Shown here: positions 1 through 4,811 of the stretch, one piece after another
Layout of the letters: every line of letters starts with the position of its first letter
How positions within the stretch are numbered: the stretch's first letter is position 1
IMG/VR virus record: IMGVR_UViG_3300034072_000926
Span: 248,001 to 312,000 of that record
Length of the DNA stretch: 64,000 nucleotides
Strand: one strand, 5' to 3'
Notes under the pieces: generated by a model
Databases searched by the model: none
The model's input: the letters and a program-made list of their open reading frames with translations, nothing else
Told to the model about the DNA's origin: nothing
Position numbers and translations under genes: made by a program

Positions 1-23
1 GCAGGGAGAATTGCGTTGTGTCA

Positions 24-533
24 CTATCCGATATGTTTCCAAGTTTTCCTTGATTTTACGTTCTTGATTGTAGAAACATTAACCGAGAATTTATCAGCCA
101 ACTGAACATTCGTTAGATTAGAATTCCTAATAAAACGGATATCATTTTCTTTGAGGACCGAACAACCGTTTCTTTCTCCGATTGCATTCCTACCTCGAGC
201 AATACAGTCATCAGAATTGTCTTTATGCGTTCCGATAGATAAATGAGATGGTTTCACACATGATGGATTATCACAGGAATGTCGAATGAGCATTCCGATA
301 GGTATGTTTCCGTTATGTGCTTCGTAAGACAATCGATGAGCAAAGATTTGCTTCCCGTTCAGGATTACAAATCCATAACCTTTTCTATCACGAGAGCCTG
401 TCCAGATCAAGCAATCGTTGACCTCTTTAGAGTTTAGATCTATTCTACATTTAGGAGAACAGACTTTCTTAGTCGAGTTGCTATTCACTTGCATTTCATT
501 AGAACATACAAGACATTGGACAGTGTAAGACAT
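24..533 (-). CDS. HNH homing endonuclease (N-terminal Cys cluster, HNH_3-type core, C-terminal HTH)
   Basis: CxxC..C..C N-terminus; 'CLIWTG..DRKGYG..AHRLSY..IRHSCDNPSCVKPSHL..GTHKDN'; HTH-like C-terminus. ATG at 533 preferred over track GTG at 563. Confidence 0.9.
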   Translation of the reverse strand: MSYTVQCLVCSNEMQVNSNSTKKVCSPKCRIDLNSKEVNDCLIWTGSRDRKGYGFVILNGKQIFAHRLSYEAHNGNIPIGMLIRHSCDNPSCVKPSHLSIGTHKDNSDDCIARGRNAIGERNGCSVLKENDIRFIRNSNLTNVQLADKFSVNVSTIKNVKSRKTWKHIG

Positions 534-544
534 CGATCTTGAGA

Positions 545-647
545 TTGAGGAGGTGGGGGCCACGCAAACCCCCGCAAGCTGCTCTGGAACTACCGTTCCT
601 GCGCGAAGAAAGGAATCACCTCCTCAAGAGTAAATTGGGCAGCTTGC
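545..647 (-). ncRNA. Candidate pseudoknotted structured RNA upstream of HNH gene
   Basis: Interleaved perfect helices 545-555/617-627 (11 bp) and 574-582/639-647 (9 bp), plus internal hairpins. Confidence 0.5.
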
Positions 648-649
648 TT

Positions 650-670
650 TGTGGGGCACTAGGCCCCACA
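650..670 (-). terminator. Hairpin directly after the clamp gene stop
   Basis: TGTGGGGC-ACTAG-GCCCCACA, 8-bp stem; no U-tract, so role uncertain. Confidence 0.4.
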
Positions 671-674
671 CTCA

Positions 675-1430
675 TTACTTCTTGCGAGCAGGAAGAATGA
701 ACTTGTATTCGGCAACACCCGAAGCCATCGTGATCTGCAGAGCGCCACGGCTCGAGAACTGAAGCTTGAGGTTTTCGTCAGCACCCAGCTTGAGGATCTT
801 CAGCACTGGATCAATGCCCCAGTGAAGATCGCCACCCAGGTCACCCGAGACATCGTCAGCGATGGTTAGGTAAGCGCGGTGCATGGACGAACCTTCGTCG
901 CCGATGTAGAAGCGCAGCTCGTTCTTGCCTTCTTCGTTCTTGACGGTCTTGACCATGAAGAAGTTTTCGAAGGTGCTATACAGACCTGCAAGAGCCTGCA
1001 GTTCCTTGAGCTTGCTGGCCGAAGGATCAACCTCGACGTCCCAGGTCGTGCCCAGGAACTTAGCCTGGTCAGGAATCAGATCCTTCGACATCAGACGGTA
1101 AGCTGCATTGCTCTTGGTGTTCTTGTTGTTGAACACGATTTCCTCAGGGGTATCAACGCCACCACGATCGCGACGCTTAATGTCGACGGTCACCCCGTCG
1201 CCCTTGTAGAGAGCACTGGTAACCAGACCCTGCAGAAGACCAAGCTGCGACAGACCGAATTCACCCTTGAGGGCTGGTTCGACGGTGGTCAGCTCGCCCT
1301 TGACAATGACAGTGCGATCATTGTCCATAGCTTCGATGATGGTCTTGTCATCAGTGCCGGTGATCTTCACCGTGTCGATGAAGCCAAGGCCACCAGTGTG
1401 CCTTACGATGTCCTGAAATGTTTCACGCAT
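675..1430 (-). CDS. Probable DNA polymerase sliding clamp (gp45-like)
   Basis: 251 aa, beta-rich, close to polB, clamp loader in same window; resembles jumbo-phage clamp family from memory. Confidence 0.55.
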   Translation of the reverse strand: MRETFQDIVRHTGGLGFIDTVKITGTDDKTIIEAMDNDRTVIVKGELTTVEPALKGEFGLSQLGLLQGLVTSALYKGDGVTVDIKRRDRGGVDTPEEIVFNNKNTKSNAAYRLMSKDLIPDQAKFLGTTWDVEVDPSASKLKELQALAGLYSTFENFFMVKTVKNEEGKNELRFYIGDEGSSMHRAYLTIADDVSGDLGGDLHWGIDPVLKILKLGADENLKLQFSSRGALQITMASGVAEYKFILPARKK

Positions 1431-1465
1431 TAGGGAGTTTATCCTTCTATTTGGATGTTTAACCT

Positions 1466-1494
1466 AATCTAGCAATTAGGTGAACGAACGTCAA
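1466..1494 (-). promoter_or_regulatory. Sigma70-type promoter
   Basis: TTGACG-N17-TAGATT (GCTAGATT) upstream of 1430 start. Confidence 0.55.
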
Positions 1495-1497
1495 TAA

Positions 1498-1800
1498 TTA
1501 GATCACCCTGACTTCGCATTGTCCACCGAAACGGCCCTGTCCGTCCGTGTAAACCGCAACTTCGTAACCCTCAGAATCGAGAGTCTTTACGAAGTCACAG
1601 AATGCAGTCATCTTGTCAGCTGGGATGATCCAGTTTGCTGCCTTCACATTGTTGTAGGCAATCATATACCCGGCCCAGCTGAGCTCAGGGAATTCAGCGA
1701 ATAGGAGTTCTCCCGTTCGCCGTTCACTTGAGGACAACTCTTCACGCGAAGGTGCCTTAGTGCGATTAATTAGGAGAACTCTATTCATCTTATTCCTCAA
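1498..1800 (-). CDS. Hypothetical protein
   Basis: 100-aa ORF with 4-nt overlap to polB stop. Confidence 0.7.
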   Translation of the reverse strand: MRNKMNRVLLINRTKAPSREELSSSERRTGELLFAEFPELSWAGYMIAYNNVKAANWIIPADKMTAFCDFVKTLDSEGYEVAVYTDGQGRFGGQCEVRVI

Positions 1801-4800
1801 AAGCTAAAGAGATCATTGAAAGTCGTGTCTTCGCGGGTCTCACTGAGGTCCCACTTCAACACACCAATCAGGTTGTTGATCTTCTTGTCAATGATCGTGT
1901 CTTCCATCGACGCAGAGTCGAAAGGAAGTTCCTTATACCACTCCGGAATGTTGAGCTCGTCGATTGGATAGGCAACGCTGTCCATCTTCAACGGGTTTGG
2001 CTTCAACTTGCAAACAATAACCTTCTGACCATCGCTGATTTCCATTGCATAATGGTCATTGTAGAGCTTGCGGAGAGTGTTCCAGTGGATAGACGCTTGA
2101 ACGTGTCCAGGAACCCTAACCTTTTCCTTCGGGCCGGATTTCAGAATATCTTTCTTGCCATCACCTGCGGTTAGGCGGTCAACATATCCCGTAATACCGT
2201 TCACCTTCTTCGGCGTTCCCTGAAGATATCCAGGCAAAGCACGGAAGTCCTTACGGAACTCACGAATCATATCAAAGATCAAATCCTTGCTTCCTCCGTC
2301 TAGCAGAGTGGTAATGATCTTTTCAAGAAACTCTTGCATAATCTTTGGCGTATCAGCGCGCTTGAGATCCAGACCAACGGCCTTGATCTTACCAGGCTTA
2401 CCATTAACGTCAAGACGCACCCCATCCTTGTCATACATCAGAAGAGCATAACGCTTCTTAGTGATGAACAAACCACGGCTTGCAATTAGTTCTCGACCTG
2501 CCTTAATGATTGCACCGCGTTCAAGACCAGTATTGAATGCCTGATCCATGAAGGGTGGGAAGCTATCGTTGACCTCGTCACCGATACCATCATAGAGACT
2601 GATCATTGCCTCACGACTTTCCAGCATCGAAGCCAACTCTGGATCTGCCTTCAGCATGTGATATGCGGTGAAGTAAACCGAGTCAGTATCGTTGTATAGA
2701 ATTGCATCACCACGAACGTCATAGACACCAGTGATGATTTCGTTGGCCTTGCTGCTCATGTGCTTGGTAATCGTTCGACCCGTCAAGGTAACCGACTGAC
2801 CAATACGAGCGTCATAGAAACGACAACCCTCATTGAGAAGCGCACCATATAGGGAGTTCAGGAGGATCTTACGAGCCTGCTGACGCTGATTCCAGAATAC
2901 TTCGTGTTCTTTGGCTTCCTTAAAGTGTGATTCGTTGATGAAGATTTTGCCATCATCAATCCTAATCGCACCTTGCTCAATTAGGCTTCGGAGCGAACTG
3001 GCATCCTTGGCTTTTACAAAGTCTGCCAATTCAGCAAAGCTGGCAGTTTCGGTTGCATACTGAGACATGATTGCGTCAATGAATTCAGTATCGATGGAAT
3101 CACCCTTCTTGAGAGCAAAACCCTTGGACTGTGCTGCTGCTTCACTGTAGACAGTTTCTTTGAACTGCATTGCCTTACGTTCGGAATACCAGCGAGCCAG
3201 AAGGCCCGGAATGACTGCCTCAACGTCAGTACGGAAGATCGTTCCATTTGCAGTGATGCAGTAGGGATTGCCCTGAAGGAAGATATACTCATAAAGCTGA
3301 GCACCGGTGACTTCTAGGGTGTTGCCATCCTCAAAGTCAACAACCATCTTCTCATCTGTGCGATCAGCGACCATCTGGTATTCGAGAGTGCTGAACAAGC
3401 CTTCCCAACATTCTGGACCAGGAGTACCCTGAGCCAGACGACTGTCGATGAGCGCGTTAGTGCGCTGAAGCCTGATCTGTCCAACGAGAGTCTCTGGGCC
3501 CATGTTAAGCGCACGGAGCGCAGATGGATACAGGGAGTTAATGTCGCAACATGCAATCTCATCATGCAGGCCAATCTTCGGCTTTGCCACGTATGCGCCG
3601 ACAACTGGTCGCTTACCATCGGCAAACTTGAAAGATGGGGTGCCATCTTCATTCTCTTCGTCGTCATTGTCGAAGTCATCATCAACATCGACTTCGAAGT
3701 CTGCGCGCTTCCTGTTTGGAACGCACATGCCACGACTGTGGGCTTCATTGATGATCGACTGCTCAATTAGAGCCACCGAACCCATCGTGGTTGGCAAGAG
3801 AACAGTATTTGCGTGAGCAATCTGATTTGCTAGACCGATGAAACGCTTCTTCTGGTCAATCTTATAGAGTAGAAGAGTGTCCTGGCGGTTGTATTCGAGG
3901 AATAACTTGAAGTCCCTCTTGTAGAGGTTGTCCAGGGTGCCGTTGTAGGCAACCTTATTTTCCTTGACCTCAATCTCACCCACGTAGTCTAGACGATAAC
4001 TGTGGAGTTCCTGAGGATTATGCTTCTTGTAAAGCTCAAGATAGTCAAGGTGAATACGACCAATCAGGTCATATGTATTGTGCTCTTTCTTGAACTGGGT
4101 GTACTTCTTCCGGCGAGGACGCTGGTTCCAAAGGCACATCCTCTTACTGTGGTCTTTGCCCATCAATCGCTCGATGCGGTTCACCACGTAGGGAATATCG
4201 AAACCCTTGGAGTTCCATCCGCTCAATACGTCCGAGTCCTCAATGAGGTCTAGGAAGATGTCAAGCATCTGAACTTCGTCATTACACAGAATAGTATTTG
4301 GTAGACTCTGACAGATCGCTTCTGCGGCTTCCCAAGTCAGGTGATCCTTATCGGATTCTGGCAAGTTAGGCTTTAGGCAGAGAGTGTATAGTTCGTTGTC
4401 TTGAGAGCGATGGACTGAGATAGCTGTGATTGCGCTGAACGGATCATCCGGACGAGCGAAGCCTCGCTGAGGATCAAAGTCCACCTCAATATCGAAGAAA
4501 GCCAGATTCAGTTCTGGCGATTCAGCGCCTAGATAGTTCTCCTCGAGACAACGAAATACCGGATTGATATCGCTCTCGTAGGTCTTGCGACTACCCTGCA
4601 TCCTTAGTTCAGCTTGGAACTTCTTATGCGAGGTGTAGGAACTTTTGGAAACTGGTCGACCCCACATGTCTTTGTAGCGGCCGGCGCGAGGATCTTCATA
4701 GTAGAAAACATAATTGGCAGGTAGCGAACGAAACACTCGCTGACCATCAATGCGCTCTACGATGAGAATCTCGTCCTTTTCTTTGTCGTGCATTGCATCA

Positions 4801-4811
4801 ACGTAGGACAC
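1797..4811 (-). CDS. polB: Family B DNA polymerase with 3'-5' exonuclease
   Basis: ExoI FFDIEVD, ExoII GWNSKGFDIPY, ExoIII YNRQD; motif A DINSLYPS, motif B KILLNSLYG, motif C YNDTDS. Confidence 0.97.
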   Translation of the reverse strand: MSYVDAMHDKEKDEILIVERIDGQRVFRSLPANYVFYYEDPRAGRYKDMWGRPVSKSSYTSHKKFQAELRMQGSRKTYESDINPVFRCLEENYLGAESPELNLAFFDIEVDFDPQRGFARPDDPFSAITAISVHRSQDNELYTLCLKPNLPESDKDHLTWEAAEAICQSLPNTILCNDEVQMLDIFLDLIEDSDVLSGWNSKGFDIPYVVNRIERLMGKDHSKRMCLWNQRPRRKKYTQFKKEHNTYDLIGRIHLDYLELYKKHNPQELHSYRLDYVGEIEVKENKVAYNGTLDNLYKRDFKLFLEYNRQDTLLLYKIDQKKRFIGLANQIAHANTVLLPTTMGSVALIEQSIINEAHSRGMCVPNRKRADFEVDVDDDFDNDDEENEDGTPSFKFADGKRPVVGAYVAKPKIGLHDEIACCDINSLYPSALRALNMGPETLVGQIRLQRTNALIDSRLAQGTPGPECWEGLFSTLEYQMVADRTDEKMVVDFEDGNTLEVTGAQLYEYIFLQGNPYCITANGTIFRTDVEAVIPGLLARWYSERKAMQFKETVYSEAAAQSKGFALKKGDSIDTEFIDAIMSQYATETASFAELADFVKAKDASSLRSLIEQGAIRIDDGKIFINESHFKEAKEHEVFWNQRQQARKILLNSLYGALLNEGCRFYDARIGQSVTLTGRTITKHMSSKANEIITGVYDVRGDAILYNDTDSVYFTAYHMLKADPELASMLESREAMISLYDGIGDEVNDSFPPFMDQAFNTGLERGAIIKAGRELIASRGLFITKKRYALLMYDKDGVRLDVNGKPGKIKAVGLDLKRADTPKIMQEFLEKIITTLLDGGSKDLIFDMIREFRKDFRALPGYLQGTPKKVNGITGYVDRLTAGDGKKDILKSGPKEKVRVPGHVQASIHWNTLRKLYNDHYAMEISDGQKVIVCKLKPNPLKMDSVAYPIDELNIPEWYKELPFDSASMEDTIIDKKINNLIGVLKWDLSETREDTTFNDLFSF

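What the first reader, a model, noticed from the sequence alone, without database searches (positions are those of the whole stretch)
545..670. Pseudoknotted RNA candidate fused to the 5' end of the HNH endonuclease gene
Seen: the 140 nt between the clamp stop and the HNH ATG hold two interleaved perfect helices (11 bp 545-555/617-627; 9 bp 574-582/639-647), a GGGGG/CCCCC hairpin extended by two G-U pairs on the minus strand, and a GGAAC/GTTCC hairpin. An alternative AGGAG-GUGA-UUCCU GNRA hairpin competes with the 11-bp helix. On the minus strand the order P1-P2-P3-P1'-P4-P2' matches HDV-like ribozyme topology, but the 3-bp P3/7-nt L3 and C-containing J4/2 are not canonical. Inference: an endonuclease-associated RNA, which could be a processing or self-cleaving element, a translational switch delaying a toxic nuclease, or a partner RNA travelling with the HNH gene.
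Basis: partly seen in the sequence, partly recalled or inferred. Interest (0 to 1): 0.72.

Follow-up and report, generated by a model that had tools for sequence, protein, structure and literature searches.

The report
Conserved jumbo-phage RNA hijacked by endonuclease
The RNA structure is real, but its core is a conserved, previously undescribed structured RNA of a group of 400-kb phages that displays an unusually long ribosome-binding sequence. The HNH endonuclease gene is a recent insertion at its 3' end that brought 14 bases able to mask that sequence.

Summary

They are of two ages:
- **Conserved core.** The 9-bp helix (P1), the GGAAC hairpin (P2), the GGGGG hairpin (P3) and the hairpin after the clamp stop (P0) form a ~110-nt structured RNA on the gene-sense (minus) strand. 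It occurs once per genome in about 10 related jumbo-phage contigs, nearly all without an HNH gene, and is supported by compensatory changes. It matches no Rfam family.
- **Invariant loop.** The most conserved part is an unpaired 13-nt stretch, UGAGGAGGUGAUU. It is complementary to the canonical 16S rRNA 3' tail and has no start codon at initiation distance.
- **Recent addition.** The 3' arm of the 11-bp helix lies in a 14-nt insertion found only in HNH-bearing alleles. A near-identical HNH-less allele lacks both. In another relative a GIY-YIG endonuclease gene starts at the same nucleotide.

Best reading (inferred): a cis-acting 30S-docking leader used as an expression slot, with an HNH-linked anti-SD that masks it. 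There is no support for an HDV-like or other ribozyme. The function is untested.

The parts
650..670 (-). P0: 8-bp hairpin starting 5 nt after the clamp stop codon. Every family member has a hairpin here, with a different sequence in each.
   Evidence: In group 2, P0 has two pairs with changes on both sides and G.U pairs only on this strand. The weak Rfam blv_FSE hit here (E=0.28, below the gathering score) is chance.
639..647 (-). P1 5' strand (GCAAGCUGC). It pairs with 574-582.
   Evidence: Across the family AAGCUGC:GCAGCUU alternates with GCCUGC:GCAGGC, giving two pairs changed on both sides. The covariation score is 0.277 against 0.000 when the partner is slid.
614..626 (-). Invariant unpaired UGAGGAGGUGAUU in the P1-enclosed loop. 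It is complementary to the canonical 16S 3' tail and has no start codon at initiation distance. It supplies the 5' arm (617-627) of the window-specific 11-bp helix.
   Evidence: Invariant in all 12 loci. The duplex with GGAUCACCUCCUUA has 14 bp and -22.5 kcal/mol. It is one of only two sites in the 465-kb genome with 10 nt or more of contiguous complementarity.
600..605 (-). J3 segment CGCGCA containing the invariant CGC. It is a candidate loop-loop partner of the P3 loop (562-566).
   Evidence: CGC in J and GCG in the P3 loop are present in all variants. There is one G.U to U.G double change (L001 vs L056). Inferred, not proven.
586..599 (-). P2 hairpin GGAAC-GGUA-GUUCC.
   Evidence: Family variants are GGGUC/GAUCC, GAGAC/GUCUC, GGGAC/GUCCC and GGGAC/GUCCU, and all of them pair.
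574..582 (-). P1 3' strand (GCAGCUUGC), preceded by the invariant AGA (583-585).
555..573 (-). P3 G+C-rich hairpin (GGGGGUU-UGCGU-GGCCCCC). It has no U tract, so it is not a canonical intrinsic terminator.
   Evidence: In the family, four P3 pairs show changes on both sides and the loop keeps GCG/GGCG. The HNH-less allele in run X4 has a different P3 loop and 3' strand.
541..554 (-). 14-nt insertion ACCUCCUCAAUCUC, an anti-SD that resembles the 16S tail. It is present only in HNH-bearing alleles. With C555 it forms the 3' arm of the 11-bp helix.
   Evidence: Absent from all 11 other family loci. Absent from the near-identical HNH-less allele in run X4 and present in the HNH-bearing contig of run X3. 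Duplex energy -18.4 kcal/mol.
534..540 (-). Conserved 3' tail AAGAUCG (GAUCG invariant). This is the slot after which the first downstream ORF starts.
   Evidence: Start codons lie at +0 (window HNH, L006 GIY-YIG), +1 (L012), +2 (L056), +3 (L003/L005) and +7 (L001).
24..533 (-). Free-standing HNH homing-endonuclease gene (169 aa). It has low G+C (about 38-40% against about 53% in its neighbours), no local SD, and is flanked by an AUCG direct repeat.
   Evidence: A presence/absence polymorphism spans window 33-569. It is single-copy in the genome.
675..1430 (-). PCNA/gp45-like sliding-clamp gene, the upstream neighbour in most relatives.

Best explanation
**The conserved element (shown).** Window 534-670, minus strand, is a clade-specific structured RNA. 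It lies in the polycistronic transcript of the replication module of a group of roughly 280-465-kb phages, between the sliding-clamp gene and an Ogg-HhH-like glycosylase gene. Its layout is P0 hairpin, P1 enclosing a large internal loop and the P2 hairpin, P3 hairpin, then the tail AAGAUCG(A).

**How it probably works (inferred).**
- The internal loop presents an invariant, non-initiating, extra-long Shine-Dalgarno-like sequence as a high-affinity docking or standby site for 30S subunits.
- The bound subunit would protect the downstream message and feed the ORF that begins within 0-7 nt of the tail. Those ORFs have no SD of their own.
- That makes the tail an expression socket. Unrelated genes have been plugged in at the same nucleotide: HNH here, GIY-YIG in L006, a 132-aa ORF in L012 and L056, and a 12-codon uORF coupled to the glycosylase-like gene in L003 and L005.

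**The window-specific part.**
- The HNH cassette (window 33-569) carries a 14-nt anti-SD that can pair over 11 bp with the docking sequence.
- This pairing competes with the ribosome, and sterically with P1/P3.
- It would throttle or delay translation of the nuclease. That is the same logic as the RBS-sequestering hairpins of T4 homing-endonuclease genes, but acting on a remote, borrowed SD.
For: **Shown**
- *One copy per genome.* The covariance model finds exactly one copy in each related record and locus, at E of 1e-16 to 1e-24. It finds none in the 118 pattern-matched loci it scored from other viral, metagenome and prokaryotic contigs.
- *Covariation.* In group 2, 96.7% of cells pair, against 37-51% when the partner is slid. 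Six pairs changed on both sides, against 0-2. P1 covaries between the two groups. No helix is disrupted in any variant.
- *Strand.* G.U pairs occur only on the gene-sense strand.
- *SD-like loop.* It is invariant, forms a 14-bp duplex of -22.5 kcal/mol with the canonical 16S tail against -11.3 for an ordinary SD, and is left largely unpaired in the predicted folds of the family.
- *Rarity.* Only two sites in 465 kb have 10 nt or more of complementarity; the other is a true RBS.
- *The phage uses SDs.* 43% of 305 crude genes have 5 nt or more of complementarity, against 18% at control positions.
- *ORF starts.* They cluster at +0 to +7 after GAUCG without a local SD, in 6 of 11 variants.
- *A second endonuclease.* A GIY-YIG gene starts at the same nucleotide as HNH.
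- *HNH and the 14-nt insert go together.* Both are absent from an allele whose laid flanks are about 99% identical (run X4). Both are present together in another genomic background (run X3).
- *Energies.* Nested folds give -60.1 kcal/mol for the conserved fold against -55.4 with the 11-bp helix forced.

**Supporting precedents**
- The two next-most-distant relatives (clamp identity 47% and 41%) have a shorter element with GG(A/C)GGUGAU(U/C)C in a helix-closed loop right after the clamp stop.
- T4 endonuclease genes are regulated by RBS-sequestering hairpins (PMC2988022).
- T4 genes 25 and 38 use a split SD (PMC3014915).
- STAB-SD: Agaisse & Lereclus 1996, as cited in PMC5737220.
Against: - No experiment or usable transcript map exists. 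The only RNA-library evidence is one 155-nt metatranscriptome contig of a relative at depth about 6, which could be DNA carry-over.
- The host and its 16S tail are unknown. The canonical tail is assumed, supported only by the phage's own RBSs such as GAGGTGATC.
- The SD lies about 85 nt upstream of the start codons. P1, P2 and P3 do not shorten that path to a normal 5-11-nt spacing, so a simple split RBS is not demonstrated.
- Four or five variants (L004, L099, L068, L021 and perhaps L007) have no ORF abutting the tail, or have ORFs with their own SD. They still keep the element, so feeding an adjacent ORF cannot be its only role.
- 57% of this phage's genes have 4 nt or less of SD complementarity anyway, so SD-less starts are not rare here.
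- L006's GIY-YIG gene has no anti-SD, so a brake is not obligatory for an endonuclease in this slot.
- In L263 the mini version is followed by a hairpin and a promoter-like site. That points to a clamp 3'-UTR role rather than a leader role.
- The 14-nt insert could be a repair scar.
Confidence: 0.42

Rival explanations
1. The conserved RNA has a function unrelated to the endonuclease. The 14-nt insertion, and with it the 11-bp helix, is a non-functional scar. It would have arisen by template switching or snap-back synthesis during double-strand-break repair at a homing-endonuclease hot spot, or it is a target-site change that protects the HNH-bearing allele from its own nuclease.
For: - The insert is an inverted copy of nearby sequence, with CAAGA/TCTTG microhomology at its edge.
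- The site is an insertion hot spot used by two endonuclease families.
- The swapped tract also covers part of P3, like a co-conversion tract (PMC2988022).
- L006's endonuclease manages without such an insert.
Against: - The complement targets exactly the invariant, functionally constrained 11 nt of the element.
- The insert is retained in two different genomic backgrounds (the window and run X3).
- The HNH ORF insertion already disrupts the site, so an extra immunity change is not needed.
Confidence: 0.28
2. The element is primarily a 3'-UTR module of the clamp mRNA. P0/P3-type hairpins plus a ribosome-holding SD would protect the 3' end, block Rho or RNases, or recycle terminating ribosomes. 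Downstream ORFs merely sit next to it.
For: - In most relatives it follows the clamp stop within 5-40 nt.
- The mini versions in L263 and L266 start 1-12 nt after the stop.
- In L263 the mini version is followed by a strong hairpin and a 10/12 sigma-70-like promoter for the next gene.
Against: - In L005, L006, L012, L056 and the run X3 background, other genes separate the clamp from the element. The element stays next to the downstream block.
- P3 has no U tract.
- The conserved tail and the clustering of start codons behind it are left unexplained.
Confidence: 0.15
3. The element is a ligand- or protein-binding regulator (riboswitch-like aptamer or translational operator) of the Ogg-like glycosylase operon. 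On this view the invariant nucleotides reflect a binding pocket, not rRNA pairing.
For: - It has a multi-helix junction with long invariant unpaired stretches and a possible loop-loop contact.
- It always lies upstream of the same gene block.
Against: - No Rfam riboswitch model matches.
- A 13-14-nt match to the 16S-tail complement is unlikely to be a coincidence of a binding pocket.
- The distance to the regulated start varies from 0 to more than 800 nt.
Confidence: 0.1
4. The element is a self-cleaving ribozyme (HDV-like or other) or an RNA-processing element that serves the HNH gene.
For: The interleaved helix order on the minus strand superficially resembles a double pseudoknot.
Against: - No Rfam ribozyme hit at E<=10.
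- The helix needed for that topology is absent from all relatives.
Confidence: 0.02

Closest known systems
RBS-sequestering hairpins of T4-type homing-endonuclease genes (I-TevI, I-TevII, I-TevIII, segB, mobE; PMC2988022)
   Same: A free-standing or intron-borne nuclease gene sits in a phage replication or nucleotide-metabolism region. A very stable helix involving an SD sequence lies just upstream of its start codon and is presumed to limit or delay translation.
   Different: - In T4 the hairpin hides the nuclease's own SD, about 8 nt before the AUG. A late promoter inside the hairpin relieves it.
- Here the gene has no local SD. The arm next to the AUG is an anti-SD, and its partner is a remote SD (about 85 nt upstream) belonging to a pre-existing conserved RNA.
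- No internal promoter is evident.
STAB-SD / ribosome-mediated 5' stabilisers (Agaisse & Lereclus 1996, cited in PMC5737220; hbs mRNA, PMC5737220)
   Same: An SD-like sequence with extended complementarity to the 16S 3' end is not used for initiation at the normal distance. It is preceded by a hairpin and lies in an untranslated region ahead of the genes it could protect.
   Different: - STAB-SD is a short linear motif near a transcript's 5' end in Bacillus.
- Here the sequence is embedded in a conserved four-helix RNA inside a polycistronic phage transcript.
- Stabilisation is untested and the host is unknown.
Split translation-initiation regions of T4 genes 25 and 38 (PMC3014915)
   Same: SD and start codon are separated by intervening RNA structure. 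The arrangement is phylogenetically restricted to one phage clade.
   Different: In T4 one hairpin shortens 22-27 nt to 5-11 nt. Here about 85 nt with three helices intervene, and the secondary structure alone does not bring SD and AUG to a normal spacing.
Ribosome standby sites (own knowledge: de Smit & van Duin standby model; tisB mRNA, Darfeuille et al. 2007)
   Same: A 30S-binding site tens of nucleotides upstream of a start codon that lacks an accessible SD.
   Different: Known standby sites are unstructured, S1-dependent stretches, not an extra-long SD displayed by a conserved fold.
HDV-like ribozymes
   Same: Only the order of interleaved helices in this one sequence.
   Different: There is no model match and no conservation of the second pseudoknot helix. 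The catalytic-core features are non-canonical.

Membership tests
HDV-like self-cleaving ribozyme | Match to the family covariance models (nested double pseudoknot P1/P1.1/P2/P3/P4) | tested here: not met
   An Rfam 15 scan of window 1-2000, both strands, at E<=10 gave no ribozyme hit.
HDV-like self-cleaving ribozyme | Both pseudoknot helices conserved among homologues | tested here: not met
   The 3' arm of the 11-bp helix is a 14-nt insertion absent from all 11 other family loci.
HDV-like self-cleaving ribozyme | Site-specific self-cleavage | not testable with these tools
   Needs in vitro transcription and a cleavage assay.
Any described RNA family (Rfam 15) | Score at or above the gathering threshold | tested here: not met
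   The only hit is blv_FSE at 21.9 bits against a gathering score of 34, on the P0 hairpin.
T4-type endonuclease RBS-sequestering hairpin | The hairpin contains the nuclease gene's own SD about 8 nt upstream of the AUG | tested here: not met
   The 20 nt before ATG 533 contain no SD. The arm at -22 to -12 is an anti-SD.
T4-type endonuclease RBS-sequestering hairpin | A late promoter inside the hairpin so that late transcripts escape repression | tested here: inconclusive
   There is no sigma-70-like site on the minus strand in 534-674. This phage's promoter types are unknown.
STAB-SD-type stabiliser | Extended complementarity to the 16S rRNA 3' end | tested here: met
   14 bp and -22.5 kcal/mol with the canonical tail. 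It is among the two longest such sites in the genome. The host 16S itself was not available.
STAB-SD-type stabiliser | No start codon at initiation distance | tested here: met
   No AUG, GUG or UUG lies 4-12 nt after GGAGG in any family member. Candidate short frames are not conserved.
STAB-SD-type stabiliser | Increases the half-life of the downstream mRNA through 30S binding | not testable with these tools
   Needs half-life and toeprint experiments.
Split RBS (T4 genes 25/38 type) | Intervening structure reduces the SD-AUG spacing to about 5-11 nt | tested here: inconclusive
   With P1, P2 and P3 formed, more than 25 unpaired nt plus a 9-bp helix still separate SD and AUG. A tertiary contact (J3 to the P3 loop, or UGAUU to GAUCG) could shorten this but is unproven.
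Free-standing homing-endonuclease cassette | Nuclease domain of a homing-endonuclease family | tested here: met
   HNH_3 at 3.7e-12. PHROG HNH endonuclease families down to 1e-31.
Free-standing homing-endonuclease cassette | Presence/absence polymorphism between otherwise near-identical genomes at an intergenic site | tested here: met
   A run X4 contig joins window 32 to 570 with 17 other letters between. Its laid flank (570-698) differs from the window by 1 letter. Relatives lack the gene at this site.
Free-standing homing-endonuclease cassette | Cleavage of the gene-less allele and homing | not testable with these tools
   Needs a nuclease assay or co-infection crosses.
Intrinsic terminator | G+C-rich hairpin followed by a U tract | tested here: not met
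   P3 is followed by ACCUCC.. here and by AAGAUCGA in relatives. The scan finds no terminator-like site on the minus strand in 534-674.

The most novel reading that the evidence does not exclude
The element is a dedicated ribosome-capture RNA of huge phages. Its conserved fold would pre-organise a 13-14-nt complement of the 16S 3' tail.

Two versions of this reading remain open:
- It acts as a portable, SD-in-trans expression socket. Any ORF dropped behind the GAUCG tail, including two kinds of homing endonuclease, would then be translated without an RBS of its own.
- After processing, it acts as a stable decoy that titrates 30S anti-SD tails during infection.

On this reading the HNH cassette carries a 16S-tail mimic (CACCUCCUCAA) that competes with the ribosome for the socket. 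A selfish gene would be tuning its own expression by imitating rRNA.
Probability: 0.15. Interest if true: 0.8.

Novelty: new variant of a known kind. Interest (0 to 1): 0.56.

Why it matters
- **A new RNA motif in huge phages.** Phages over 400 kb are known for carrying translation-related genes, yet few of their RNAs have been described. This would add a conserved, covariation-supported motif whose most constrained part is an rRNA-tail complement. That points to direct manipulation or recruitment of ribosomes by a structured phage RNA.
- **How mobile nuclease genes settle.** Two unrelated homing endonucleases begin at exactly the same nucleotide behind the element. One of them brought a sequence that masks the element's ribosome-binding loop. 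This is a testable example of a selfish gene borrowing, and damping, a host-phage expression signal.
- **Practical use.** If the socket works, it could serve as a compact translation or stability module for phage engineering.

Tried and rejected
- **Rfam.** A scan at E<=10 gave nothing relevant.
- **Annotated phage records.** BLASTN of window 1-1500 found only short HNH-internal matches to Salmonella phages.
- **Pattern scans.**
  - The SD..AGAGCAG pattern in prokaryotic genomes gave 41 hits. None scored as a family member with the model (best E=0.094, 20.6 bits).
  - The 3'-half pattern in viral contigs gave 114 hits (77 new loci scored) but no new family member.
  - The exact insert-plus-tail string gave 0 hits.
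  - The mini-version pattern recovered only L266 again.
- **HNH relatives.** The closest in viral contigs is 43% identical, so the HNH leader could not be compared at other loci. The genome has no HNH paralogue.
- **Second covariance model.** It did not re-register P2 and P3 between the two subgroups. Helix tables were therefore made by anchored extraction, and covariation was counted within group 2 and for P1 only.
- **Rejected pairings and ORFs.**
  - *UCUUG:CAAGA closing helix and a 5'-flank:tail closing helix.* Both are inconsistent across variants.
  - *Mini-ORFs inside the element* (UUG-AGG-AGG-UGA, or an AUU start). Neither frame nor stop is conserved.
  - *GTG at 563 as the HNH start.* The ATG at 533 matches the slot used in L006, and the extension would be encoded by RNA-structure sequence.
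- **Clamp identity.** PDB sequence and Pfam searches gave nothing. Atlas look-alikes gave PCNA/gp45.

Full report
**Context**

The window is bases 248001-312000 of a 465,259-bp virus record. All genes at its left end run on the minus strand:
- a family-B DNA polymerase gene (1797-4811);
- a 100-aa ORF (1498-1800);
- a 251-aa gene (675-1430);
- the 141-nt intergenic stretch (534-674);
- an HNH gene (24-533).

The 251-aa protein has no Pfam or PDB sequence match. The HNH gene is confirmed (HNH_3 at 3.7e-12; PHROG HNH families). Its G+C content (about 38-40%) is well below the ~53% of the adjacent intergenic stretch and clamp gene. The next gene, just outside the window, encodes an Ogg-HhH-like glycosylase homologue.

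One search recovers the perfect inverted repeats 545-555/617-627 (11 bp), 574-582/639-647 (9 bp) and 650-657/663-670 (8 bp). The minus-strand MFE fold (-60.1 kcal/mol, z = -3.2) contains the 8-bp hairpin, the 9-bp helix, the GGAAC hairpin and the GGGGG hairpin with two U.G pairs. The 11-bp and 9-bp helices are interleaved. In 3000 dinucleotide-preserving shuffles, a helix of 11 bp or more appeared 7 times and the 11+9 combination never.

**Relatives show the helices have two different ages**

*Where the element occurs.* Protein-guided and pattern searches recovered a set of jumbo-phage contigs, up to 463 kb, whose clamp proteins are 75-88% identical to the window's. These hold a ~110-nt element homologous to window 534-650. 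A covariance model finds exactly one copy in each related record or locus, at E of 1e-16 to 1e-24. It finds none in the more distant 480-kb relative. None of the 118 pattern-matched loci it scored from other viral, metagenome and prokaryotic contigs is a member. The window's genome also holds a single copy. None of these relatives has an HNH gene at the site.

*Shared architecture*:
- a hairpin of variable sequence (P0);
- helix P1, either AAGCUGC:GCAGCUU or GCCUGC:GCAGGC;
- a long internal loop containing the invariant UGAGGAGGUGAUU, and later an invariant CGC;
- hairpin P2, with stems GGAAC, GGGUC, GAGAC or GGGAC and their matching partners;
- the invariant AGAGCAG, which supplies the P1 3' strand;
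- a G+C-rich hairpin P3, with stems GGGGG, GGGGAG, GAGGAG or GGGGGUC and their partners, and GCG/GGCG in its loop;
- the tail (A/C)AGAUCG(A/G).

*Covariation.* Within the second subgroup 96.7% of cells pair, against 37-51% when partners are slid. Six pairs changed on both sides, against 0-2. The covariation score is 0.322 against 0.03-0.14. P1 covaries between the subgroups, with a score of 0.277 against 0 when slid. G.U pairs occur only on the gene-sense strand. This is therefore an RNA of the window's minus strand.

*The 11-bp helix is not conserved.* Its 5' arm is part of the invariant loop. Its 3' arm lies in a 14-nt insertion (window 541-554, ACCUCCUCAAUCUC) between P3 and the tail, and no other family locus has it.

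**The insertion travels with the HNH gene**

Public runs were laid on window 1-1500.
- *DNA run X4.* A contig joins window 32 directly to 570, with 17 other letters between. Read on the minus strand, this is an intact element with a different P3 loop and 3' strand, the tail ACGAUCGG, no 14-nt insert and no HNH. Its laid flank (570-698) differs from the window by 1 letter.
- *DNA run X3.* A contig covers window 1-651 without gaps, so it holds HNH, the insert and the element. Upstream it continues into a different P0 and flank.

The unit that is present or absent is therefore window 33-569: the 3' part of P3, the anti-SD insert, AAGAUCG and the HNH ORF. It is bounded by an AUCG direct repeat. 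The ORF's ATG directly follows GAUCG, and the resident sequence GGAUAG supplies the end of the reading frame, including its stop codon. This is what a free-standing homing-endonuclease cassette with a short co-conversion tract looks like (PMC2988022).

**The tail is an insertion and start-codon hot spot**

| Locus | Start offset after GAUCG | ORF |
|---|---|---|
| Window | +0 | HNH, 169 aa |
| L006 | +0 | GIY-YIG + NUMOD3 endonuclease, 273 aa |
| L012 | +1 | homologous 132-aa ORF |
| L056 | +2 | homologous 132-aa ORF |
| L003, L005 | +3 | 12-codon GUG uORF; its stop overlaps the glycosylase-like gene's AUG (AUGA) |
| L001 | +7 | 82-aa ORF |

The same uORF follows the HNH stop in the window's genome. 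None of these starts has a local SD. Four or five other variants (L004, L099, L068, L021 and perhaps L007) have starts 11-23 nt away, some with their own SD.

**The invariant loop is an rRNA-tail complement**

- *Pairing.* UGAGGAGGUGAUUCC can form 14 consecutive pairs (two of them wobble) with the canonical 16S 3' tail GGAUCACCUCCUUA. The energy is -22.5 kcal/mol, against -11.3 for an ordinary SD.
- *Rarity.* In the 465-kb genome only one other site has 10 nt or more of contiguous complementarity, and that one is a real RBS followed by ATG.
- *SD use by the phage.* 43% of 305 crudely called genes have 5 nt or more of complementarity, against 18% at control positions. The longest is 9 nt.
- *No initiation.* No start codon lies at initiation distance from the loop in any member, and candidate mini-frames are not conserved.
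- *Mini version.* The two next-most-distant relatives (clamp identity 47% and 41%) lack P2 and the tail. They keep GG(A/C)GGUGAU(U/C)C in a loop closed by a G+C helix that starts 1-12 nt after the clamp stop, followed by a strong hairpin. In one of them a 10/12 sigma-70-like promoter follows.
- *Limit of the family.* Relatives at 33-41% clamp identity have the next gene abutting the clamp and no element.

**Interpretation**

*Shown:* a conserved structured RNA; an invariant, exposed, non-initiating SD-like loop; an HNH cassette with a linked anti-SD; and a shared start slot.

*Inferred:*
- The loop docks 30S subunits.
- The docked subunit stabilises and/or feeds the downstream cistron.
- The 11-bp pairing (-18.4 kcal/mol) competes with the ribosome to damp HNH translation.

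In nested folds the conserved structure (-60.1 kcal/mol) and the structure with the 11-bp helix forced (-55.4 kcal/mol) are close in energy. P3 abuts both P1 and the anti-SD arm without any linker. I therefore think (an inference) that full coexistence as a pseudoknot is sterically strained and a switch is more likely.

The logic matches the RBS-sequestering hairpins of T4 endonuclease genes (PMC2988022), STAB-SD (cited in PMC5737220) and the split initiation regions of T4 genes 25 and 38 (PMC3014915). It meets the defining features of none of them completely; see the membership table.

A separate, family-wide pseudoknot is possible. The invariant CGC in J3 (window 601-605 region) can pair with the GCG of the P3 loop. 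That gives 5-6 bp in the window, L001 and L056, with one G.U to U.G double change, and only 3 bp elsewhere. The evidence is thin.

**Against and open**

- Transcription is not shown. One 155-nt metatranscriptome contig of an insert-less relative, at depth about 6, is weak evidence.
- The host 16S sequence is unknown.
- The SD lies about 85 nt from the start codons.
- Some members keep the element without an abutting ORF.
- L006's endonuclease has no anti-SD.
- The mini versions look like clamp 3'-UTR elements.
- The 14-nt insert could be a repair scar, since it is an inverted copy with microhomology at its edge.

**Verdict**

The RNA is real and a translational-brake role for the 11-bp helix is plausible. 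But the RNA is not an HNH partner, and it is not HDV-like.
- The conserved element appears undescribed: it matches nothing in Rfam 15.
- Its kind (cis-acting structured leader or stabiliser with an SD) is known, but the form is new.

Noticed in passing
L006:4681-5502 (+): A GIY-YIG + NUMOD3 homing-endonuclease gene starts with its ATG at exactly the same slot (AAGATCG|ATG) as the window's HNH gene, behind an insert-less copy of the element.
   Followed up: partly
L263:4736-4830 and L266:1594-1675: A shorter version sits directly after the clamp stop in the 47%- and 41%-identity relatives. It is a G+C helix closing a loop with GG(A/C)GGUGAU(U/C)C, then a strong hairpin. In L263 a sigma-70-like promoter follows. 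The covariance models do not detect it.
   Followed up: partly
G000:C1 ~247900-248025 (L026:912-946, minus strand); L003:3933-3975: A 12-codon GUG uORF begins 3-4 nt after the tail (after the HNH stop in the window's genome). It ends in AUGA, overlapping the start of the Ogg-HhH-like gene. Its length is conserved but its peptide is not.
   Followed up: partly
L001:4743-6320; L012:1119-2140; L056:128-1576; L006:6066-6562; L026:128-394: Downstream of the glycosylase-like gene, every relative carries a tandem array of small paralogous ORFs (about 70-140 aa) ending in ..(L/M)FKL(T/R)W(L/M). Their function is unknown.
   Followed up: no
L012:3282-4670 (-): A 462-aa class-I aminoacyl-tRNA-synthetase-like gene (tRNA-synt_1 + Anticodon_1) lies between the clamp and the element. 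L005 and L006 keep only a short 3' remnant of it (..ISQRW / ..IQERW) just upstream of the element.
   Followed up: partly
window 596-616 / 674-694: A 21-nt, 76%-complementary inverted repeat links the J3/SD-flank region to the last codons of the clamp gene. It may be chance, or an alternative pairing that a terminating ribosome opens.
   Followed up: no
window 562-566 with 600-605: The P3 loop UGCGU can pair with J3 CGCGCA (6 bp here). CGC and GCG are invariant family-wide, with one G.U to U.G double change between L001 and L056.
   Followed up: partly
G000:C1:315310: This is the only other site in the genome with 10 nt or more of contiguous 16S-tail complementarity. It is a genuine RBS (TAAGGAGGTG-caa-ATG), probably of a very highly expressed gene.
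   Followed up: no
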